In this document: positions 2,357 to 61,370 of the stretch, in pieces
How positions within the stretch are numbered: the stretch's first letter is position 1
How the letters are laid out: each line of letters begins with the position of its first letter
Program-made: the position numbers and the translations under genes
Notes under the pieces: model-generated
Told to the model about the DNA's origin: nothing
Seen by the model: the letters and a program-made list of their open reading frames with translations, nothing else
The model's database searches: none
IMG/VR virus record: IMGVR_UViG_3300035698_029839
Coordinates: 124,001-188,000 of that record
Length of the DNA: 64,000 nt
Reading direction: 5' to 3' (one strand)

Positions 2357-2405
2357 GACATAGGTGTGTAAATTTTTATATTTATGTGCCTATGTCATTT
2401 TTTTT
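2357..2405 (+). terminator. intrinsic terminator
   Basis: GACATAGG.../...CCTATGTC stem then T-run. Confidence 0.65.
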
Positions 2406-2417
2406 AAAGGGTTATAT

Positions 2418-5400
2418 ATGGCAAAATATTTAGTAATAGTAGAGTCTCCTAAAAAAACAGGGTATATTAAAAAATTTCTTGGTAAGGATTATGAAGTAAC
2501 AGCTTCTGTAGGGCATATTAGGGACTTACCACCTAAAAAAATTGGTGTTAGTATTAAAAAAGATTTTGAACCAACATATGAAATTTATCCTGATAAAAAA
2601 GATATAGTAAAAAATATACAAAAAATGGCTGGTAGATCAGATCTTGTTTATATAGCAACGGACATGGATCGTGAAGGAGAAGGAATAGCTCAACATATAG
2701 CAGATATACTTCCCCAAGGAACAGATTTTAAAAGAATAGTTTATGGTTCGGTTACTAAAAAGGCAGTAGAAGATGCTATAAATAATGCTGGTGAAATAAA
2801 TAAGGATATGGTTAATAGTTATGAGTGTAGGCGTATACTGGATCGTATCGTAGGATGGAAATCTAGTTTCATTGTCTCTCAGGCTACTGGAGGAAGATCA
2901 GCAGGAAGAGTTCAAAGTGCGGCCTTAAGAATACTTGCTGAAAGAGAGAAAGAAATACAAAATTTTATCCCAAAAGAATATTGGCCTATCGAGGTAGAAT
3001 TGGAAAGAGAAAATGGAGAAAGGGTTATTGCCACTATTAAAGTCCCAAAATCCTTAGACATTAAGACTGGGGAAGAAGCTAATAAAATTATCGATGTCCT
3101 TAAAAAAGAAAAATGGGTTGTTTCTAAGTATGAAGCAAAAGAAAAAACAAATAAAGCTTATGCTCCATTCACAACATCCACCTTATATCAATCATCTTCT
3201 TCTATTCTTGGTTGGAGTTCCAAGAAAACAGCATCTGTAGCTCAACAACTATATGAAGAGGGGTTGTGTTTGTCGGGAGATGAAGTTATAACTATGGAGA
3301 ATGGAGCAATTATTCCTATAAAAGATGCTGGTAAATATATTGGTCAAAATGTTAAGGTATTCGGGGGAATAGAAGAAGAAATAAATTTGAAGATTCAAAA
3401 CGCTAAAATTAAAGATTATCAAAAAATTCCTTATGCAGGACATATGTATAATATTAAAACTTTTGATGGACAAGAGATATCTGTTACTCACGATCATAAA
3501 CTGTTAACATATAATAAAAATGGATTTGAATGGAAAAAAGCTTGTCATTTATATAAAAATGATTTTGTCATTTGTGCAAAAAAAATAGAATGTAGCAGGG
3601 GGGATAGGGACATTCATATAATAGATTTTATTTCTCAAATGCCGTCGTCGATAACTGATAAAATTTTGGTAGGCTTTTATCCTAAATATAAAAATAAAAT
3701 ATTAAAAATTATAGAGGATAATAGAGGTTTTATATCATCTCAGTCTACTTATTATAAATATAAAAGAAATCTTAAAATACCGCTTTCTTTTTTTAATCTG
3801 TATTACGATATGGATTTTCTAAAAAAGAGTATAAAATATTTTCAATGGCAAAGTGCTGGCTCTAAAAAAGAATACATGAAAGCAGACAATTTTTCTTATT
3901 TTTTGGGATTATGTCTTGGAGATGGACATATATGCAAAGATAAAGCAATGATTAATTTCCCGAAATGCGTAGCAAAGGAAGGGGAATGGAAAAAGATATT
4001 TAAAGGTATTATTTATGAGCAAAAAATTAATTTGAATAGAAATGAAATTCAGTTTTCAGGTAAAATTTTATATGAATTATGTGCTTATTTCGGTGGGGCT
4101 AAGGGATCTAAAAGTGATAAAATTTATATTCATCCATTTGTTTCGTCTTTGCCTGAAAAATATATATATAATTTTATAGCTGGTTTGTTCGATTCTGACG
4201 GGTGTATTAATCTTTCGAAAAATCGAAAAATTAGCATATCGTATACTAGTATCAGCCAGAAGATGTTGAAACAATTTGTAGTGCTTCTTAGAACACTGGG
4301 ATACTGTAGTAGTTTGCATCGCAGAAAGAATGATAATAAAAATGGAAATATTAAAATTTGGGAAGAATCAATTAAAGATTTTCTTCTAAATATAAAAAAA
4401 TATTTGATAGTCAAGCAGTTTAAAGTTTCAAGTTTGTTAAATTTGATAGATGAAAAATCAGTTGTTTTTACAGGAAAAAGTAGGAACCAGAATTATCCAG
4501 TTATGAATATTATTGAATATGAGAGACAAAAACAAGGTATAACAAAACAAAAGTTATCTCAGCATGTTTTTAAAAATAATAGCGGATATTGGTCTTATAC
4601 AAGAACAAATGATGGTCATACAAGAAGTAGTTTTCCTAGTAAAAAAAATCTTTTAAAAATAAATGAAATACTAAAAATAAAAGATATTGAAAAAATAATT
4701 AACGGAGATGAATATTTTGCGAGAATAAAGGAAATTGATGTTCAGTATTTTGATGGATATGTTTATGACATTTCTACTTCTTCAGAGAACTTTATAGCTA
4801 ATACATTTTATAGTCATAATTGCACATATATTAGAAGCGATTCAACGTTTATTGTCCCTGATTTTGTTGATGGGATAAGATGCTCAATTCCTGCTAAATA
4901 TGGGGATAATTATCTCCCTAATAAATCTAACGTGTTTTCTAATAAGGCATCTGCTCAAGAAGCTCATGAGGCTATCAGAATCACCAATATAGCTGTTGAA
5001 ACTGTTGGGGGTGTTGATACCCAAAAGCTTTATAAAATCGTCTGGAGACGAACTGTGGCTTCTCAGATGGCAAATATGGAGCAGTTTGTGGGGAATGCTG
5101 ACTTTGACTGTAAAAAGTATAAATTTACGGCAAGCGGAAGTAGAGTTATCTTCGATGGCTGGAAAAAAGTATGGACTTACGGCTCATATTCTGACTCAAT
5201 TTTACCTGAATTTGTGGTTGGGGAAGAGTTAAAATTGATAGATGTGAAAACCGAACAAAAATTCACTTCTCCACCTCCGAGATACTCAGAATCATCTCTT
5301 ACAAAAGAATTGGAAAAAAGAGGTATTGGCCGTCCGAGCACCTATGCTTCCGTCCCAAATACTCTATTTTCTAGAGGTTATATAGAAAAACAGAAAAATA

Positions 5401-5978
5401 TTATCCATACAACAGATATGGGAGTTAGAGTATCCGATTTCCTAGTCGATGTCGATTTCTGCTTCGTAGATCTTGATTTCACCAAAAATATGGAGAATGA
5501 TTTAGATTGTGTGGCAAAAGGAGATTGTAATAAATTAGATATTTTAAATTGTTTCTGGAATAGGTTGAAAAGTGATATTACCAATGCAAAAAATAAAAGA
5601 GAAGAAAATAGTAAGACAGATTATAAGTGTCCAGAATGTGGGGCTTATCTTCAAAAGAAACATTCTAAGTATGGTCCGTTTCTGAGTTGCTCAAATAGGG
5701 CTAATAAAACTATTGAATGTCAGTATAAAGCGGATATTAGTTGTGACGGAAAACCGAAGGAGAAAATAAAGGTAGAATTAGAGAAAAGTGATTTTAATTG
5801 TCCTAATTGTGGAAAGCCGCTACTTAAAAAGAAGAGCAAAAAAAACTGGGAGTATTTAGGCTGCGAATCATGGAATAAGGATGATCAGTGCAAAGGTTTC
5901 TATGATAAAGAGAGTGGAGAAAAAATAGTATTTAAAAAGAAAAAATATAAGAAGTGGGGAAAAAAGAAAAAAAAATAA
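2418..5978 (+). CDS. topA: DNA topoisomerase IA with intein and C-terminal zinc ribbons
   Basis: LVIVESP, ATDMDREGE, SAGRVQS, TYIRSDS, AHEAIR, GIGRPSTY motifs; true start ATG 2418 (MAKYLVIVESP). Confidence 0.95.
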   Translation: MAKYLVIVESPKKTGYIKKFLGKDYEVTASVGHIRDLPPKKIGVSIKKDFEPTYEIYPDKKDIVKNIQKMAGRSDLVYIATDMDREGEGIAQHIADILPQGTDFKRIVYGSVTKKAVEDAINNAGEINKDMVNSYECRRILDRIVGWKSSFIVSQATGGRSAGRVQSAALRILAEREKEIQNFIPKEYWPIEVELERENGERVIATIKVPKSLDIKTGEEANKIIDVLKKEKWVVSKYEAKEKTNKAYAPFTTSTLYQSSSSILGWSSKKTASVAQQLYEEGLCLSGDEVITMENGAIIPIKDAGKYIGQNVKVFGGIEEEINLKIQNAKIKDYQKIPYAGHMYNIKTFDGQEISVTHDHKLLTYNKNGFEWKKACHLYKNDFVICAKKIECSRGDRDIHIIDFISQMPSSITDKILVGFYPKYKNKILKIIEDNRGFISSQSTYYKYKRNLKIPLSFFNLYYDMDFLKKSIKYFQWQSAGSKKEYMKADNFSYFLGLCLGDGHICKDKAMINFPKCVAKEGEWKKIFKGIIYEQKINLNRNEIQFSGKILYELCAYFGGAKGSKSDKIYIHPFVSSLPEKYIYNFIAGLFDSDGCINLSKNRKISISYTSISQKMLKQFVVLLRTLGYCSSLHRRKNDNKNGNIKIWEESIKDFLLNIKKYLIVKQFKVSSLLNLIDEKSVVFTGKSRNQNYPVMNIIEYERQKQGITKQKLSQHVFKNNSGYWSYTRTNDGHTRSSFPSKKNLLKINEILKIKDIEKIINGDEYFARIKEIDVQYFDGYVYDISTSSENFIANTFYSHNCTYIRSDSTFIVPDFVDGIRCSIPAKYGDNYLPNKSNVFSNKASAQEAHEAIRITNIAVETVGGVDTQKLYKIVWRRTVASQMANMEQFVGNADFDCKKYKFTASGSRVIFDGWKKVWTYGSYSDSILPEFVVGEELKLIDVKTEQKFTSPPPRYSESSLTKELEKRGIGRPSTYASVPNTLFSRGYIEKQKNIIHTTDMGVRVSDFLVDVDFCFVDLDFTKNMENDLDCVAKGDCNKLDILNCFWNRLKSDITNAKNKREENSKTDYKCPECGAYLQKKHSKYGPFLSCSNRANKTIECQYKADISCDGKPKEKIKVELEKSDFNCPNCGKPLLKKKSKKNWEYLGCESWNKDDQCKGFYDKESGEKIVFKKKKYKKWGKKKKK
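3267..4820 (+). mobile_element. intein with LAGLIDADG homing endonuclease (518 aa)
   Basis: Starts CLSGD, ends SHN followed by Cys; block B TxDH; LGLCLGDG and IAGLFDSDG motifs. Confidence 0.93.
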
Positions 5979-22146: not shown

Positions 22147-24600
22147 GTGGATAAGGATTTAATTTTATCATCTTTAAAAAAAATAAGATCTTTGTTTTCT
22201 TATGTGGTTGATTGTCCAGATAAGTTACTAGGAGATCTTGCGTCTATAATCCCCGCCAGACATATGATATATCCTTGTGATATTATAGATTTGAGAAATT
22301 TTCTTATTAAAGATAGAATTGTTTCCTCTAATCCTATTTTATTGTTTTCTAATCAATTTGCTGAGAAATATTTAAAAGATCACTCTTTATTTTTGGTATT
22401 AGATTCTGAAAAAACAGGGGTAGATAATGATAGGTATGGAGGTTTGCAATTAAATTATTGTGAAGAGCTAGATATTACTAAACTTATTGTGAGGATTATA
22501 GTTAATGAACCTGCTGCTTCTGGATCTTTTAATGAGATAAAAGATATGGTTAAGGAGTTTGGGTTGGAAGTGGAATGTCTAATATCTAATAGTGTGCCAG
22601 GAATTTCTTTTCCAAATAAAAAATTATCATATAGTGTTACTCATAAAAAAGCACAAAGAATAATAGGAAAACATTCTGATCTTCCTCTTTCTCCAAAAGA
22701 AAAAAATATCTTTGAATTTTTAAGAAGAGTTAAAAAAGATAATGGTCTTAATGTCCAAATGAGAGTAGCAGGTGGATGGGTTAGAGATAAACTTCTCGGT
22801 CAAGAAAGTGATGATATAGATATTGCTGTTGATATGCCAGGATATGATTTTGCTAAGATAGTGGCTGCCGATGCTGTTAAAAATAATATAACACATGATC
22901 CTAGAGCTTATAGAGTTAGTCTGGAAAAGTCAGCAGATCCTAATGAGATAGGTATGGCTAATGATGATTTAATGGTAGGTGCTGTTTCTTTATTCGGCCA
23001 AAAAATAGAATTTGTTCCTATGAGAACAGAACATTATCCAGATATTAATAGTCGTCAGCCAACTATTGCTCTTACTAATGACCCAAGAGAAGATGTAAAG
23101 AGAAGAGACCTTACTATTAACTCTATTTATTATAATATTGATACAGGACAAATAGATGATTTTGTAGGCGGGGTAAAAGATTTAGGGTTAGAAGATGGAG
23201 AAATGAATTTAAGAACACCTGATAAAACTAAAAAAACTTATACGGAAGACCCATTAAGATTATTAAGGGCATTACGTTTTCATAGTCGTTATCCTAACAG
23301 TGTATTAGATCCTAAGATTATAGAATCTATGTCTGATCCTAATATCCAAGAAGCATATACAAAAAAAGTTGCTACAGAAAGGGCTGGTCCTGAAATAGTT
23401 AAAATGATGATGGGAGAAAATCCTATCGACTCTATTAAAATTTTATTTGATAGTGGTTTATATAAGAATATTTTTAAAGTTCCTTCGATGGAAGATCTTA
23501 ATGAAGAAGGTATTCATATGGAACAACAAACTCCTTATCACCAATATAATTTAAAAGATCATACTATCGAAGTAGTGAAAAATTTAAATAATATTATGAA
23601 AGATAATGGAGAGAGTGATTACATGAGGGGTCTTATGAATGTTGCTGCTTTATTTCATGATTTTGGAAAAATGAAAAGTGGAGTGCAAAAACCTCATCCT
23701 AAGAATAAAGGGCAAATGCAATATATAGGGCATGAAATAGAATCAACAAAGATGGCTAATGAAATATTAAAATCCATAGGGGTGGGAAAAGATGATAGAG
23801 ATATAGTAAATCAAGTTATTAGTTTGCATATGAGGCCTCATGGTGCTGAGAAATGGGGCCTAAAAGGTAAGGGTAATTTTCTTAGGAAAACAAGAATGCA
23901 TGGTAAGGATGAAGAGCATAAAGATTTATGGAAATATGTTTTGAATTTTAATAAAGCTGATGAGATGTCTTCTCAACCTGATAATTTTGATGAGGCAAAA
24001 TGGCAGAGTAAATATGATAATATTAGAAATTTTGTAGAAAGTCCTACAGGTGTATTTAAAGGAACGGTTTTGAATGGAAAGGATATCATGACTATATTTC
24101 CCGATTTAAATCCATCAACAGGGTATATTAAAGAAGTTCTTAATTTTATTAAAGAGAAACAAGATGAAGGGATAATTAATGTTGCTGCAGATTTAGAAGA
24201 GGCAAAACAGGAAGCATTCAATCAAATTAATATAATAGCTTCATCTATAAGAGATAAATATGGTTATAAGGGAGAGGAAAATAAAATGGGATCTAATTGG
24301 TATAAAAAGGTAAAGACTTCACAAATAGCTCCATTGACTAATAATGTTAAAGATAAAGAAATGGATGCAGAAATAAAAAAAGGTCCTAATGAAGCTCTTC
24401 CAAAATATCATGTGGGTATGAGGGTTAGAGATAGAAGAAAATCTATCTCTCAAGAACAGACTTACGGGAAAGTAGAACAAATAAAAGACAATAAAATAAA
24501 AATAGTTTGGAACTTCGACAATAAAGAAAAAAGACAAGAAGAAATTCTTGACATGGTGGAGAATACAGAAATATTATCTTTAATTGTATCGGAGATATAA
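22147..24600 (+). CDS. cca: CCA-adding tRNA nucleotidyltransferase with HD domain and N/C extensions
   Basis: AGGWVRD, DIDI, RRDLTIN, EDPLRLLRALRF, ER, HDFGK. Confidence 0.9.
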   Translation: MDKDLILSSLKKIRSLFSYVVDCPDKLLGDLASIIPARHMIYPCDIIDLRNFLIKDRIVSSNPILLFSNQFAEKYLKDHSLFLVLDSEKTGVDNDRYGGLQLNYCEELDITKLIVRIIVNEPAASGSFNEIKDMVKEFGLEVECLISNSVPGISFPNKKLSYSVTHKKAQRIIGKHSDLPLSPKEKNIFEFLRRVKKDNGLNVQMRVAGGWVRDKLLGQESDDIDIAVDMPGYDFAKIVAADAVKNNITHDPRAYRVSLEKSADPNEIGMANDDLMVGAVSLFGQKIEFVPMRTEHYPDINSRQPTIALTNDPREDVKRRDLTINSIYYNIDTGQIDDFVGGVKDLGLEDGEMNLRTPDKTKKTYTEDPLRLLRALRFHSRYPNSVLDPKIIESMSDPNIQEAYTKKVATERAGPEIVKMMMGENPIDSIKILFDSGLYKNIFKVPSMEDLNEEGIHMEQQTPYHQYNLKDHTIEVVKNLNNIMKDNGESDYMRGLMNVAALFHDFGKMKSGVQKPHPKNKGQMQYIGHEIESTKMANEILKSIGVGKDDRDIVNQVISLHMRPHGAEKWGLKGKGNFLRKTRMHGKDEEHKDLWKYVLNFNKADEMSSQPDNFDEAKWQSKYDNIRNFVESPTGVFKGTVLNGKDIMTIFPDLNPSTGYIKEVLNFIKEKQDEGIINVAADLEEAKQEAFNQINIIASSIRDKYGYKGEENKMGSNWYKKVKTSQIAPLTNNVKDKEMDAEIKKGPNEALPKYHVGMRVRDRRKSISQEQTYGKVEQIKDNKIKIVWNFDNKEKRQEEILDMVENTEILSLIVSEI

Positions 24601-31554: not shown

Positions 31555-32688
31555 ATGAAGAGAAATAATAAAGAACAAAAAGAAATACTAGAACAAAAAG
31601 AGTTTTTAAGACAAGTTATAGATGCATCTCCTAGTTTAGTTTTTGTTAAGGATATTAATGGAAAATATATTTTAGCAAATAAAGCAATGGCTAAATTATA
31701 TGGAACAACTATTACTGAAATGGAGGGAAAAACTGATCATGATTTCGCTAAAAAAAATATAATTAATGTCAAAGAAGCAGATAAATATGTTGATGCAGAT
31801 AGAGAAGTAATAGAAAATAGAAAAGAAAAATATATTAGTGAAGAAACTGTTACCAGTTTTGATGAAAAAATTACTTATTTTCAAACTAATAAAATTCCTA
31901 TTATTTTAAATGATGGTTCTGTATGTTGTCTTGGAGTTTCTTCTGATATTACAGCAAGAAAGAAATCAGAAGAAGAATTGTTAAAAGTCAATGCAGAATT
32001 AGAACAGTTTGCTTATGTGGCTTCTCATGACCTTCAAGAACCATTAAGAGCAGTTTATTCTTATTGCCAATTATTAAAAGAAAAAGAATATGATAATGTT
32101 AATGATGAGGGGAAGAAGTATTTTAACTATATAATAGATTCTAGTCTAAGAATGAGAAATCTTATTAAAGAACTTCTCGATTATTCGAGAGTTGGGAGAA
32201 AAGATAAACCATTTGAAAAAATTAATTTAGGAGAAGTATTAGAGGAAGTATTGAATGATTTTGAAGTTCTGATAAAAGAGACAGAAGCTAATATAATTAT
32301 TGATCGCGATATACCACATATTTTTGGTATACGTTTTAGAATTAAACAATTGTTACATAATATAATTAGTAATTCATTAAAATTCAAAAGTGAGGAAAAA
32401 CCTGTTATAAGAATAATTTGTTGCAATTATAAAAAAAATTCTCATTATTGGCTTTTTTATATTAAAGATAATGGACTAGGAATAGAGCCAAAATATTATG
32501 ATCGTATTTTTGGGATTTTTAAAAGATTGTATTCAAGAGAAGAATATCCTGGTACAGGAATAGGATTAGCATTATGCAAAAGGATTGTAGAGGCCCATGG
32601 TGGTAAAATATGGGTAAAATCTCAAAAAGATAAAGGAACTTGTATCTATTTTACGATTGCTAAATCATGGGGTATTTTTGATAATTAA
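31555..32688 (+). CDS. cytoplasmic PAS-domain histidine kinase
   Basis: PAS (FVKDING.Y..AN), ASHDLQEPLR, N-box, DNGLGI, GTGIGLA; no TM segment. Confidence 0.93.
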   Translation: MKRNNKEQKEILEQKEFLRQVIDASPSLVFVKDINGKYILANKAMAKLYGTTITEMEGKTDHDFAKKNIINVKEADKYVDADREVIENRKEKYISEETVTSFDEKITYFQTNKIPIILNDGSVCCLGVSSDITARKKSEEELLKVNAELEQFAYVASHDLQEPLRAVYSYCQLLKEKEYDNVNDEGKKYFNYIIDSSLRMRNLIKELLDYSRVGRKDKPFEKINLGEVLEEVLNDFEVLIKETEANIIIDRDIPHIFGIRFRIKQLLHNIISNSLKFKSEEKPVIRIICCNYKKNSHYWLFYIKDNGLGIEPKYYDRIFGIFKRLYSREEYPGTGIGLALCKRIVEAHGGKIWVKSQKDKGTCIYFTIAKSWGIFDN

Positions 32689-52483: not shown

Positions 52484-52861
52484 ATGATAGATGAAAGATT
52501 TCCACCAGAACCAACTACACACAATCCTATAAGTATGAGGATACTAGGACTTGCAAAAACTCCATCAGCATGGGCCCAAATAGCTAGAAGAGCAGAAAAA
52601 GCAAATAAGTTCGGAGATGCTTATTATTACTGGAATGCAGGGGCAACTGCCTATACAAGAAGTTCAGAAAAAAGAGTAGTATATGAAGGATTTAGAGATA
52701 AATGTCTTGAAGTATGGAGAAAAGATAATAAATCATGCGAAGAAGAACATACTCCTAACTCCTTGACTAAAAAGGCATTAGAAGAAACAGATAAGAATAT
52801 AGACTGCTTATGGGTTGATAGTGTGGAAGAATTATTCGAAGAATTAGAAAAAGATGATTGA
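52484..52861 (+). CDS. protein with RelB/DinJ-like antitoxin C-terminus
   Basis: PNSLTKKALEE...DSVEELFEEL. Confidence 0.5.
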   Translation: MIDERFPPEPTTHNPISMRILGLAKTPSAWAQIARRAEKANKFGDAYYYWNAGATAYTRSSEKRVVYEGFRDKCLEVWRKDNKSCEEEHTPNSLTKKALEETDKNIDCLWVDSVEELFEELEKDD

Positions 52862-52885
52862 CAGAGTATAATTTTTTGGTATAAT
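52858..52885 (+). promoter_or_regulatory. consensus sigma70 promoter for the RNA cluster
   Basis: TTGACA-16nt-TATAAT with TG extension. Confidence 0.85.
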
Positions 52886-52895
52886 ACTGTTTGAA

Positions 52896-53164
52896 ATATT
52901 AATATGTTAGATGCATGGTGTGAAAATGTTGAGAGGCGACATGCCGAAACCACATGAAAAACTTTGAATCCGTTATTAGCTGAAAGGTGAGGTCAAGAAG
53001 TTTAATAGAAGGTGGGTATAAAAAATTATCCGAGGATATCGAGGGCCTTTGGAAGCCAAACGCGTAGGTAAGCCATAAATCGTAGCAAGTAACGGAGAGT
53101 TATATTTTACTTGACTTTGACTCAATGAGAGATAACAAGCCAATCTTGTCTGATATATTAATGT
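52896..53164 (+). ncRNA. unidentified structured RNA 1
   Basis: 17-bp closing stem, internal helices, no ORF. Confidence 0.65.
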
Positions 53165-53184
53165 TATTGTTCTTTAAAAATATA

Positions 53185-53309
53185 GTAGCAGTGGCGTGGA
53201 AGTCTGACAAAACCGTTTGCCAAAACGTATCTCGGGGATAATATTTGGCGAGTATATATAGGCATATATATCAGTTAAAGAGTTAGTTGCAAACCAAATT
53301 GCCTGCTAT
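53185..53309 (+). ncRNA. unidentified structured RNA 2 (tRNA-like ends)
   Basis: GTAGCAG/CTGCTAT stem, TGGCG start, internal hairpins. Confidence 0.5.
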
Positions 53310-53329
53310 TGTTCTTTAAAAATTTAAAA

Positions 53330-53679
53330 GGGGATAAACTGGTTATCGATTCTTACGGTAGAGAGTTGAATGGCGTGTACGAGATGGTAGTCGGCTCGTT
53401 TAAAAATCTACTAACAATTTATAACTGACACTAGTTATGCAAAAGCTGCTTAAGCTAAATTAAGCTGTTTGTTCCAGATTCCTGTTATGGAAACAAGCAC
53501 GAAAACAGGATGGTTGATTATCTTTTTTCTCAAGAGGATATGATGCGAGATTAATTTGAGATAGAAATGAAGAACCTTGTTAATTAGGGTCGGATTTTTG
53601 AATTTTAAATAATTAACTACGCACGTAGAAGTTTAATTTAAAAGTAAAGAAGACGCGAGTTCGAATCTCGCTATCTCCA
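53330..53679 (+). ncRNA. ssrA: tmRNA, tag (A)DTSYAKAA
   Basis: GGGGATA/TATCTCC-A acceptor with G3-U; T-arm GCGAG-TTCGAAT-CTCGC; ATAACT then tag ORF 53427-53453 ending Ala-Ala-stop. Confidence 0.93.
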
Positions 53680-53702
53680 TTATTTTAAAAAGGAAAGAAA
53701 AA

Positions 53703-54239: not shown

Positions 54240-54503
54240 ATGGAAGACAAACCAATAGATAAACCTTTTAGTGAAGAGGATCTACAAAAAGCAAAAAAAC
54301 TTGCTAGAGATTCTCATATCGTTCTTGAAGGAGATCAAAAATCAGGATTCATTGGGACTTGTGCAGAAATGCCCACAGTGATGAACGATGGAGAAACAGA
54401 CGAAGAGTGTATAGAGAAGACAAGAGAATCCATTCAAGTAGCAATAGCTTTTATGCTTGAAGAAGGAATGAAAATACCTAAACCAAATTCACGGAAAAAA
54501 TAA
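54240..54503 (+). CDS. HicB-like antitoxin domain
   Basis: GFIGTCAEMP....GET.EE......E.I......G..IP.P. Confidence 0.8.
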   Translation: MEDKPIDKPFSEEDLQKAKKLARDSHIVLEGDQKSGFIGTCAEMPTVMNDGETDEECIEKTRESIQVAIAFMLEEGMKIPKPNSRKK

Positions 54504-60287: not shown

Positions 60288-61370
60288 ATGAAGAAAATAT
60301 TGATATTTTTAGTTTTGCTTATATCGTGTCAATTATCTTACGCAGAGGACATTGAACGGATAATAAAAATATATGTATCTAATATGAAACCGTGTGTTAT
60401 TATTGAAGATACAGAAAATAGTCACGTCCCTCCTATTATTTCTGGTTTTGAAATAGATCTGTGGAATGAGATAGGAAAAGACTTAAAGGCTCAAAGCATA
60501 ATTAAAAGTTGGGAATTTGTTCCTGTAACTTGGTCCGAATTAGAAAAGAATGTAAGGAATGGAAATGCAGATGTAACTTGTTCGGGTCTAACTATTCGTT
60601 CTAAGAGAATGGAGTGGGCTGATTTTTCTATTCCAACTATGAATTCTGGTTTAGGTATAATGATATTAAAAAATCCTGAAAAAAATTCTTTATTGTTTAA
60701 GTTTCAGGTTCTTTATGATGCTCTTGCAATGCCAGTAACATTGTTTGGATTGTTTGTAATAATCTTTTCTAATATTATATGGATGGCAGAAAAGAAGGGA
60801 GATGGAATTGATACTAAATATTTTCCAGGAATTTTTGAAGCAATATATTTTTGTATTGTAACTTGTTCTACGGTAGGATATGGAGATTATACTCCTAGAA
60901 GATGGACGACTAAAATAGTAACGATAGCACTTATATTCTGTGGTATTATTGCTTTTTGTAATTTCACAGCCTTATTATCTGCTGACTACACCACGGAAAA
61001 AATTTCAGGAGAAATTCAATCTCCACAAGATCTTAAAGGCAAAATAGTTTTAACTCAGATAGGAACAACAAGTGTAGATTACGTTAAGGGGCTAGGAGCA
61101 TCTAAGGTTAAGACTGTTGATGATATAGATAGTGCTTGTGATAATCTACTACTTGAGAGAGGTGATGCTGTAGTATTTGATCATCCTGTTCTTCTCAATT
61201 ATGTGAAAGAGAATCCTGATAAAGTGGAGTTGGTAAATGGTCTTTTCGATGAGCAGTATTATGGGTATGTATTCCCTAAGGGAAGTGATTTAAAGAGAGA
61301 TGTGGATATAGCTATTCTTAAACTCTATGAAGATGGGACTTATAGCAGGCTTTATAAAAAGTGGTTTTAA
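60288..61370 (+). CDS. GluR0-like ligand-gated K+ channel
   Basis: Signal peptide, split solute-binding domain (GFEIDL, TIRSKR, GTTS, DHPVL), M1-P-M2 with TVGYGD. Confidence 0.9.
   Translation: MKKILIFLVLLISCQLSYAEDIERIIKIYVSNMKPCVIIEDTENSHVPPIISGFEIDLWNEIGKDLKAQSIIKSWEFVPVTWSELEKNVRNGNADVTCSGLTIRSKRMEWADFSIPTMNSGLGIMILKNPEKNSLLFKFQVLYDALAMPVTLFGLFVIIFSNIIWMAEKKGDGIDTKYFPGIFEAIYFCIVTCSTVGYGDYTPRRWTTKIVTIALIFCGIIAFCNFTALLSADYTTEKISGEIQSPQDLKGKIVLTQIGTTSVDYVKGLGASKVKTVDDIDSACDNLLLERGDAVVFDHPVLLNYVKENPDKVELVNGLFDEQYYGYVFPKGSDLKRDVDIAILKLYEDGTYSRLYKKWF

What the first reader, a model, noticed from the sequence alone, without database searches (positions are those of the whole stretch)
52896..53164. 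Unidentified ~270-nt structured RNA under a consensus promoter
Seen: begins about 10 nt after TTGACA-16-TATAAT. It has a 17-bp closing stem (52896-52912/53148-53164) and helices 52927-33/53121-27 and 52969-77/53088-96. A crossing pairing 52991-97/53110-16 implies a pseudoknot. It is richer in G/C than its flanks and has no ORF. Inference: an abundant large ncRNA. From memory its UGGU-GAAA...AAGCCA junction loosely recalls the raiA-motif RNA, but I cannot confirm this.
Basis: partly seen in the sequence, partly recalled or inferred. Interest (0 to 1): 0.7.

Follow-up and report, generated by a model that had tools for sequence, protein, structure and literature searches.

The report
New structured RNA beside phage tmRNA
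The flagged stretch is a real, conserved, intricately folded non-coding RNA gene of unknown function that sits under the strongest promoter of the window as the first unit of a "stable-RNA operon" ending in the tmRNA of a very large (about 0.3-0.55 Mb) bacteriophage, and it matches no described RNA family.

Summary
A perfect TTGACA-16-TGnTATAAT promoter is the only one in the 64 kb window. It is followed by a 271-nt non-coding stretch (52895-53165) closed by a 16-17-bp terminal stem.

The window is part of a 298-kb huge-phage contig from a salt lake. I found six full-length homologues in related phage genomes and contigs, plus two partial variants. On a structure-blind alignment, 60 consensus pairs are 94% paired and 29 show compensatory changes, against 13 ± 2.5 in shuffles. 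The consensus-energy z-score is -10.

The conserved fold has helices P1, P2, P3, P3a, P5, P6, P7 and P8, plus a variable P9.

No Rfam family matches, raiA included. Pattern scans found no copy in 185,000 prokaryote genomes.

The RNA always lies upstream of the phage tmRNA in one transcription unit. Other unknown structured RNAs share this unit, separated by a conserved spacer (TTGTTCTTTAAAAAT). Close relatives carry the tmRNA without it.

The best reading is a separately released, trans-acting stable RNA of a modular phage RNA operon. Its function is unknown and its transcription is untested.

The parts
52858..52885 (+). Sigma-70-type promoter of the RNA operon: TTGACA, 16-nt spacer, TGgTATAAT
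   Evidence: It scores 12/12 with an extended -10. It is the only perfect match in 64 kb. An equivalent promoter stands at the same place in G001, G003, M5 and M7. In G002 it stands upstream of RNA-X.
52895..53165 (+). RNA1, the flagged structured RNA (271 nt here; 224-290 nt in homologues)
   Evidence: Seven full-length members were found. There are 60 consensus pairs, 93.8% of cells paired and 29 pairs with double-sided changes. The consensus-energy z-score is -10.2 against column shuffles. The core covariance model R1 scores 110-166 bits on members and finds nothing in 20 other phage records.
52895..52910 (+). P1 5' strand, pairing with 53150-53165 (13-16 bp in the family)
   Evidence: About half of the columns show compensatory changes. 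There is one mismatch among all cells.
52913..52944 (+). P2 hairpin: GCAUG/CAUGC closing a 22-nt loop, GUGUGAAAAYGUUGAGAGGCGA, that is near-invariant in six of the seven members
   Evidence: All five stem pairs covary (GCAUG/CAUGC, GUGCU/AGCAC, GAUGUG/CACAUU). G003 has the stem but only a 6-nt loop.
52950..53015 (+). P3 (52950-53/53012-15) enclosing P3a (52959-65/52997-53003) and a variable apical region (52966-96)
   Evidence: P3 changes from CCAC/GUGG to CCUA/UAGG in M5. P3a changes from AAACUUU/GAAGUUU to AAGCCCG/CGGGCUU in the read-derived variant, and to AAGCUUG/CGGGUUU and AAGCUUG/CAAGUU in others.
53030..53052 (+). P5 hairpin: 53033-35/53046-48, possibly extended by 53030-32/53050-52, with loop AUAUCGAGGG
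   Evidence: The middle pair is G-C, C-G, U-A or G.U in different members.
53055..53069 (+). P6 hairpin GCC/GGU
   Evidence: C-G becomes U-A in G001, M5 and the read-derived variant A. G.U alternates with G-C.
53085..53149 (+). 3' domain: P7 (53085-89/53145-49), P8 (53094-95/53140-41) and the variable hairpin P9 (53099-53136)
   Evidence: In P7, A-U becomes G-C in G003 and M6. In P8, G-C becomes A-U in M5. P9 differs in length and sequence in every member. In G002 it is replaced by a 6-nt loop.
53167..53181 (+). Spacer TTGTTCTTTAAAAAT, copy 1, directly 3' of P1
   Evidence: There are two exact copies in the window and none elsewhere in it at 0-1 mismatch. The same motif follows RNA1 or precedes the tmRNA in G002, G003, M5, M6 and M7, and closes every block of the L192 array.
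53185..53312 (+). RNA2, a second unknown non-coding block of the same transcription unit
   Evidence: It has homologues in G001 and L192 with shared ends. There is no credible Rfam match; the best is OTKONC at 16.9 bits against a cut-off of 141.
53309..53323 (+). Spacer TTGTTCTTTAAAAAT, copy 2, the leader of the tmRNA
53330..53682 (+). Phage tmRNA gene (tag DTSYAKAA; CCA not encoded)
   Evidence: Rfam RF00023 scores 95 bits, E 1e-35. ARAGORN also finds it.

Best explanation
RNA1 is a gene for a stable, trans-acting structured RNA. It is the first cistron of a modular stable-RNA operon in a clade of very large phages.

Proposed mechanism:
1. Host sigma-70 RNA polymerase starts about 7-10 nt after the consensus -10 box, so the 5' end of the transcript falls directly at the foot of P1.
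2. The RNA folds co-transcriptionally into a multi-helix body (P2, P3/P3a, P5, P6, P7-P8-P9).
3. P1 then clamps the 5' and 3' ends together.
4. An endonuclease cuts in the conserved single-stranded AU-rich spacer (UUGUUCUUUAAAAAU) just after P1. RNase P cuts at G+1 of the tmRNA.
5. RNA1, the optional further RNAs and the tmRNA are thereby released as separate molecules.

The near-invariant loops and junctions, set against freely covarying stems, suggest that the folded RNA presents a specific surface to a partner (a protein, a ribosome or another RNA). I favour a role in the phage's control of host translation or RNA metabolism, alongside the tmRNA it is expressed with.

Shown: conservation, fold, non-coding nature, promoter, operon order, modularity.
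Inferred: transcription, processing sites, action in trans, and the field of function.
For: - Real conserved structure: on the structure-blind 7-sequence alignment A7 there are 60 pairs, 93.8% of cells paired (83.5 ± 1.1 in shuffles) and 29 pairs with compensatory change (13.3 ± 2.5; 0 of 500 shuffles reach it). Sliding the 3' partner by 1-3 columns gives about 41% paired. The consensus-energy z-score is -10.2. Two divergent variants seen in salt-lake reads add compensatory changes in P3a, P5 and P6.
- Non-coding: indels are mostly not multiples of three.
- Promoter: it is the only perfect consensus in 64 kb and is conserved in the homologues.
- Operon: RNA1 lies upstream of the tmRNA on the same strand in 7 of 7 genomes.
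- A separate module rather than a leader: it is separated from the tmRNA by RNA2 (window), by RNA2 plus an ORF (G001), by an ORF (M7), or by an ORF plus four RNA blocks (L192).
- Dispensable for the tmRNA: G004, L191 and L194 have the same neighbourhood and promoter feeding the tmRNA without RNA1.
- Spacer motif: it is repeated after each block.
- Copy number: one copy per genome.
Against: - No transcript evidence exists: no RNA run was listed.
- The ends of the mature RNA are inferred only.
- No partner is known, and nothing ties the RNA to translation beyond co-location with the tmRNA.
- The single-sequence folding z-score is weak (-1.9).
- The family is narrow: seven genomes or contigs of one phage clade. 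All members are related by descent, so the shuffle tests overstate independence.
- The spacer could simply be the pre-tmRNA leader, duplicated when modules were inserted.
Confidence: 0.55

Rival explanations
1. RNA1 is a cis-acting 5' domain of the pre-tmRNA transcript. It would act as a structured 5' cap that protects the precursor from 5'-end-dependent decay, or guide its folding and processing, and would have no life of its own.
For: It always lies upstream of the tmRNA in the same unit. Its P1 begins at the predicted transcript start. No terminator lies between it and the tmRNA in the window, G002, G003 or M5.
Against: - It lies 165 to about 860 nt from the tmRNA, with other RNAs or ORFs between them, in the window, G001, M6 and M7.
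- In G002 and M6 it is not at the 5' end, because RNA-X precedes it.
- Close relatives express the tmRNA from the same promoter without it.
- Nine helices and about 60 invariant unpaired positions are far more than a protective stem needs.
Confidence: 0.15
2. RNA1 is a ribozyme, self-cleaving or a trans-acting processing enzyme, that matures the multi-RNA transcript at the repeated spacer.
For: - It has a complex fold with invariant junctions.
- It is the first or second cistron of a transcript that has to be cut into several RNAs.
- A conserved 15-nt spacer follows each block.
- These phages encode no recognisable processing RNA, and nothing in the operon matches Rfam.
Against: - No similarity to any known ribozyme class in Rfam.
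- Host RNase P and RNase E-type enzymes suffice in known stable-RNA operons (own knowledge).
- Relatives without RNA1 keep the same leader motif before the tmRNA.
- No complementarity between RNA1 and the spacer was established.
Confidence: 0.1
3. RNA1 is a highly divergent phage member of the raiA-motif family.
For: There is a loose likeness of layout. Both have a long closing P1 and an optional P2. Both have a P3a-P3b-like arm with an asymmetric A-rich internal loop. Both have variable peripheral stems. Both are of unknown function and possibly highly expressed (raiA features from PMC12968392, read).
Against: - The raiA covariance model gives no hit at E <= 10 in four genomes, nor in the local permissive scans.
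- The two defining pseudoknots have no supported counterpart: the only candidate long-range pairing fails in 6 of 7 members.
- The order of helices differs, with three hairpins between P3 and the 3' domain.
- raiA is known from Bacillota and Actinomycetota, not from phages (PMC12968392).
Confidence: 0.03
4. RNA1 is a ligand- or signal-sensing leader (a riboswitch-like element) that controls read-through into the downstream RNAs.
For: It has a structured 5' region with invariant junctions upstream of the genes it could control.
Against: - There is no terminator or other expression platform after P1.
- The downstream genes are RNAs, so there is no ribosome-binding site to mask.
- The downstream partner varies (RNA2, an ORF, or the tmRNA).
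- At 224-290 nt, the size is far above known aptamers (own knowledge).
Confidence: 0.05

Closest known systems
Stable RNAs C and D (species 1 and 2) in the tRNA gene cluster of phage T4 (own knowledge, not tested here)
   Same: These are phage-encoded stable RNAs of unknown function. They are co-transcribed with tRNA-type genes in one multi-RNA unit and cut out of the precursor by host nucleases.
   Different: The T4 RNAs are smaller (about 120-140 nt). They are unrelated in sequence and sit among tRNAs, not before a tmRNA. RNA1 has a much more elaborate conserved fold.
raiA-motif RNA (Rfam RF03072)
   Same: It is of similar size (about 200 nt). It has a long conserved closing stem, an optional P2 and variable peripheral stems. 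Its function is unknown, and many of its unpaired positions are conserved (PMC12968392).
   Different: There is no covariance-model match. No PK1 or PK2 equivalent is supported. The helix order differs. raiA is bacterial (Bacillota, Actinomycetota), whereas RNA1 is confined to a huge-phage clade.
ROOL and GOLLD RNAs
   Same: They are large, ornate RNAs of unknown function. They are frequent in phages and prophages and often lie next to tRNA genes (PMC12286853 and own knowledge).
   Different: They are two to three times larger (about 580 and 800 nt). Rfam models exist for them and do not match here. They are known to form homo-oligomeric cages, and nothing here speaks to oligomerisation.
Candidate structured RNAs predicted from IMG/VR (Fremin et al. 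2023, PMC10690425)
   Same: The same data source (IMG/VR phage contigs) and the same kind of evidence (covariation in intergenic regions).
   Different: Those candidates are 29-151 nt long, whereas RNA1 is 224-290 nt. I could not check whether a fragment of RNA1 is among the 8,495 models.

Membership tests
raiA motif RNA (RF03072) | Match to the family covariance model at or near the gathering score (101.3 bits) | tested here: not met
   There is no match at E <= 10 in G000-G003. None appears in the permissive local scans of the window, of L169 or of L117.
raiA motif RNA (RF03072) | Two pseudoknots: PK1 (apical loop of P3b with the linker between P5 and P6) and PK2 | tested here: not met
   The only candidate, the apical loop of P3a with 53089-96, is significant in the window alone. 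In the six other members p is 0.11-0.58. Its 3' arm pairs locally instead.
raiA motif RNA (RF03072) | Long closing P1 of conserved length and an optional P2 | tested here: met
   P1 is 13-16 bp in all seven members and a P2 hairpin is present. These features are generic and shared with many RNAs.
Any Rfam 15 family (RNase P, 6S, SRP, ROOL, GOLLD, OLE, HEARO, Y RNA, group I/II introns, ribozymes) | Covariance-model match | tested here: not met
   At gathering thresholds only the tmRNA is found in the window. With E <= 10 on four members and on the whole 1.4-kb array of L192, only chance-level hits appear.
tRNA or tRNA-like element | Cloverleaf detectable by ARAGORN | tested here: not met
   ARAGORN finds only the tmRNA in the window.
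Protein-coding gene (either strand) | A reading frame kept among homologues | tested here: not met
   In every pair of homologues, 3 to 6 internal indels are not multiples of three (1, 4, 7, 8, 16, 29 and 38 nt among them). The stop-free stretches on the minus strand differ in frame and extent.
Phage stable-RNA operon cistron (functional class, not a sequence family) | Same strand and transcription unit as a tRNA-type gene, with no terminator between, and flanked by processing signals | tested here: met
   The order is promoter, RNA1, (other RNAs), tmRNA in 7 of 7 genomes. No terminator was found in the window. A repeated spacer is present. Processing itself is not testable with these tools.
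Phage stable-RNA operon cistron (functional class, not a sequence family) | A discrete stable transcript | not testable with these tools
   No RNA run was listed for this sequence.

The most novel reading that the evidence does not exclude
RNA1 is the founding member of an undescribed class of large phage RNAs. The locus around it would be a new kind of genetic unit: a plug-and-play array of up to six or seven unrelated structured RNAs (RNA-X, RNA1, RNA2 and three more in L192). A conserved 15-nt spacer punctuates the array and a tmRNA terminates it. Through this array, huge phages would deliver a toolkit of RNA machines, possibly including a new ribozyme or ribosome-binding RNA, to reprogram host translation.
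Probability: 0.3. Interest if true: 0.85.

Novelty: new variant of a known kind. Interest (0 to 1): 0.62.

Why it matters
Large RNAs with many covarying helices and invariant junctions are rare. The known examples have mostly turned out to be ribozymes, ribonucleoprotein cores or, recently, self-assembling cages.

This one has three useful properties:
- It is small enough (224-290 nt; the natural minimal form in G002 is 224 nt) for structure determination.
- It comes with natural deletion variants: G003 lacks the big P2 loop and G002 lacks P9.
- It has natural negative controls: sister phages that carry the same operon without it.

Its fixed partnership with a phage tmRNA points to an unexplored layer of RNA-based host takeover in huge phages. 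So does its company of several other unknown structured RNAs behind one very strong promoter. These phages encode their own CCA-adding enzyme, but no SmpB was found. The repeated spacer offers a testable processing signal.

Tried and rejected
- Rfam, at gathering thresholds and at permissive E-value thresholds, on the window and on four homologous loci: only the tmRNA was found. The raiA model run alone also found nothing.
- INPHARED phage BLAST: no match.
- The upstream 125-aa and 235-aa proteins as anchors: no relatives.
- Strict RNA1 motif patterns in viral contigs, metagenome contigs and genome contigs: only the known members and chance hits in coding DNA.
- A 20-nt perfect match in G006: it lies inside a gene and is chance.
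- Core model R1 on 20 further huge-phage records: no member.
- RNA-seq runs: none was listed.
I favoured the long-range helix as a pseudoknot for a while and dropped it when M5, M6 and M7 came in.
- A P4 hairpin (53014-31) proposed by RNAalifold on three or four sequences: dropped. It competes with P3, which gained compensatory support in M5. Position 53029 also varies freely through all four bases.
- Antisense ORF: rejected on indel lengths.
- Terminase (PF03237) as a clade anchor: no hit.
- SmpB (PF01668): absent from G000-G004.
- The OTKONC hit on RNA2: 16.9 bits against a cut-off of 141, which is chance.
- The official count of structure pairs was not used, because it needs a long typed structure string. 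The same counts were computed in a script instead.

Full report
**Where the window comes from.** The window is bases 124,001-188,000 of a 297,710-bp IMG/VR virus record estimated to be 62% complete. DNA runs that hold the stretch are salt-lake metagenomes. A JGI contig, L124, is identical over the locus. The window encodes phage-type and host-like genes, nearly all on the + strand. They include a topoisomerase with an intein, a clamp loader, an 817-aa CCA-adding/HD enzyme, a DNA methylase and a dCMP deaminase. This is a huge phage with about 30% G+C.

**Checking the observation.**
- The promoter is exactly as described: TTGACA 52858-63, a 16-nt spacer and TATAAT 52880-85, preceded by TG. It is the only perfect TTGACA-N16-18-TATAAT in the 64 kb.
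- The terminal stem forms in the minimum-energy fold and appears as an inverted repeat.
- There is no + strand ORF of 40 aa or more.
- The G+C excess is small, and the single-sequence folding z-score is only -1.9. On this sequence alone the case would be weak.

Rfam finds a tmRNA at 53330-53682 at 95 bits, and ARAGORN gives the tag DTSYAKAA. Between RNA1 and the tmRNA lies a second non-coding block, RNA2 (about 53185-53312). It is bracketed by two exact copies of TTGTTCTTTAAAAAT. No terminator was found in the unit.

**Homologues.** Anchoring on the small neighbouring proteins found nothing. Three other routes found members:
- A degenerate tmRNA 3'-end pattern led to a complete 460,978-bp phage with terminal repeats, G001. 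It has RNA1, RNA2, a small ORF and the tmRNA in the same order.
- RNA1 motif patterns added G002 (350,866 bp). An alignment of the conserved 817-aa enzyme added G003 (547,943 bp, complete).
- Looking up the neighbouring HicB-like and C1-peptidase proteins in the large protein collection gave three more members. These are M5 (L188), M6 (L192) and M7 (L193). They score 110-135 bits with a core covariance model, R1, built from the first four members.

Two further partial variants are visible in contigs of one salt-lake run.

The family is narrow:
- There is one copy per genome, and no copy in 20 more distant huge-phage records.
- Motif-pattern scans found nothing in metagenome contigs beyond the known members, and nothing in 185,579 prokaryote genomes.
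- Three close relatives (G004, L191, L194) have the same neighbourhood, promoter and leader feeding straight into the tmRNA, without RNA1.

**Structure.** I used a MAFFT alignment of the seven full-length members, made without regard to structure (A7). On it RNAalifold predicts 60 pairs, of which 29 show a change on both sides with pairing kept. My script gives the following:
- 93.8% of cells are paired, against 83.5 ± 1.1 when 3' letters are shuffled within columns.
- 29 pairs are compensatory, against 13.3 ± 2.5 in shuffles (0 of 500 reach it).
- About 41% of cells pair when the 3' partners are slid by 1-3 columns.
- The consensus energy is -41.0 kcal/mol, against -10.0 ± 3.0 for column-shuffled alignments (z = -10.2).
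- The structure conservation index is 0.60.

The four-sequence MAFFT alignment already gave z = -4.9. The members are related by descent, so these figures overstate independence. The pattern is nevertheless the classical one: stems change in pairs while loops and junctions stay fixed.

The conserved helices, in window coordinates, are:

| Helix | Coordinates | Support |
|---|---|---|
| P1 | 52895-910 / 53150-165 | Covaries in about half its columns |
| P2 | 52913-17 / 52940-44 | All five pairs covary; the 22-nt loop is near-invariant in six members but cut to 6 nt in G003 |
| P3 | 52950-53 / 53012-15 | CCAC/GUGG becomes CCUA/UAGG in M5 |
| P3a | 52959-65 / 52997-53003 | AAACUUU/GAAGUUU becomes AAGCCCG/CGGGCUU in a read variant |
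| P5 | 53033-35 / 53046-48 | Four pair types at the middle position; may extend to 53030-32 / 53050-52 |
| P6 | 53055-57 / 53067-69 | C-G becomes U-A in three members |
| P7 | 53085-89 / 53145-49 | A-U becomes G-C in G003 and M6 |
| P8 | 53094-95 / 53140-41 | G-C becomes A-U in M5 |
| P9 | 53099-53136 | Variable hairpin; a plain 6-nt loop in G002 |

Indels between members (1, 4, 7, 8, 16, 29 and 38 nt among them) exclude a conserved reading frame on either strand.

All three are complementary in this window's sequence, but none is a family feature.
- 52927-33/53121-27 is no better than shuffles.
- 52991-97/53110-16 involves the variable P9.
- 52969-77/53088-96 looked promising with four sequences, and I treated it for a while as a pseudoknot crossing P3a. 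It fails in M5, M6 and M7. Its 3' arm is better explained by P8.

No pseudoknot is established.

**Identity.** No Rfam 15 family matches RNA1 in any of four members at E <= 10. None matches anywhere in the 1.4-kb array of L192. The raiA model alone finds nothing in four whole phage genomes. The published raiA architecture is P1, an optional P2, P3a-P3b, P4, P5 and P6, plus PK1 and PK2 (PMC12968392). It shares only generic traits with RNA1. A large survey of structured-RNA candidates in IMG/VR reports models of 29-151 nt (PMC10690425). I could not check whether a fragment of RNA1 is among them.

**The locus as a whole.** The order is as follows:

| Genome | Order of elements |
|---|---|
| Window | promoter - RNA1 - RNA2 - tmRNA |
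| G001 | promoter - RNA1 - RNA2 - ORF - tmRNA |
| G002 | promoter - RNA-X - RNA1 - tmRNA |
| G003, M5 | promoter - RNA1 - tmRNA |
| M7 | promoter - RNA1 - ORF - tmRNA |
| M6 (L192) | RNA-X - RNA1 - ORF - RNA2 - three further non-coding blocks - tmRNA |

In M6 each block ends in the spacer YUGUUCUUUAAAAAU. RNA-X (about 220 nt) is itself conserved between G002 and M6, with 60 consensus pairs. RNA1 is therefore one module, the most constant one, of a variable multi-RNA transcription unit that ends in the tmRNA. No SmpB gene was found in these phages, two of whose genomes are complete. The tmRNA genes do not encode CCA, while a CCA-adding enzyme is conserved.

**Mechanism.** I commit to the following. 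Host RNA polymerase starts at about 52892-94. RNA1 folds and P1 joins its ends. Cleavage in the AU-rich spacer, together with RNase P cleavage at the tmRNA 5' end, releases the modules. RNA1 then acts in trans through its invariant loops. Its modular placement and its absence from sister phages argue against a purely cis-acting leader. The lack of any expression platform argues against a riboswitch. A ribozyme role in maturing the array is possible but unsupported. Transcription, processing and function remain untested.

**Verdict.** This is a real and apparently undescribed structured RNA family of a huge-phage clade, with an interesting operon context. The raiA idea is not supported.

Noticed in passing
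window 53185-53312 (spacers at 53167-81 and 53309-23): RNA2 is a second unknown non-coding block of the same operon. It has homologues in G001 (L110, about 1760-1880) and in L192 (about 3100-3200). They share the ends 5' CAGUGGCRUGG and 3' CAAACCAAUUGYCUGCU. There is no Rfam match.
   Followed up: partly
L117 1550-1795 and L192 2378-2598: RNA-X is a third unknown structured RNA of about 220 nt, lying directly upstream of RNA1 in two relatives. It has 60 consensus pairs, 3 of them compensatory, and no Rfam match. A weak 5' similarity lies at G000:C1:249797-249853, outside the window, in another non-coding stretch behind a promoter-like site.
   Followed up: partly
L192 3205-3720: Three more non-coding blocks (about 125, 205 and 160 nt) lie between RNA2 and the tmRNA. 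Each ends in the spacer YTGTTCTTTAAAA. None matches Rfam.
   Followed up: no
L116 920-1330 (G001:C1, about 84.3-84.8 kb): A separate non-coding array in G001 contains the same spacer motif. It also has three repeats of about 90 nt that begin GGCUAUU and end AAGCUUUCC. ARAGORN finds no tRNA there.
   Followed up: no
window 53330-53682: The phage tmRNA has an unusual tag, DTSYAKAA, with K where relatives have M (xNSYAMAA). The gene does not encode CCA. No SmpB gene was found in G000-G004, while an 817-aa CCA-adding/HD enzyme (window 22147-24600) is conserved in the clade.
   Followed up: partly
window 2364-5978: A 1204-aa topoisomerase gene is interrupted by an intein with a LAGLIDADG homing endonuclease. 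A relative has an intein in the DNA methylase gene that lies upstream of the RNA locus.
   Followed up: no
window 54240-54503: A HicB-like antitoxin-family gene lies just downstream of the tmRNA. It is conserved in G002 and M5. No HicA partner was looked for.
   Followed up: no
window 31555-32688 and 60288-61370: The phage carries a PAS/histidine-kinase gene and a glutamate-receptor-like ligand-gated ion channel gene. Both are unusual cargo for a phage.
   Followed up: no
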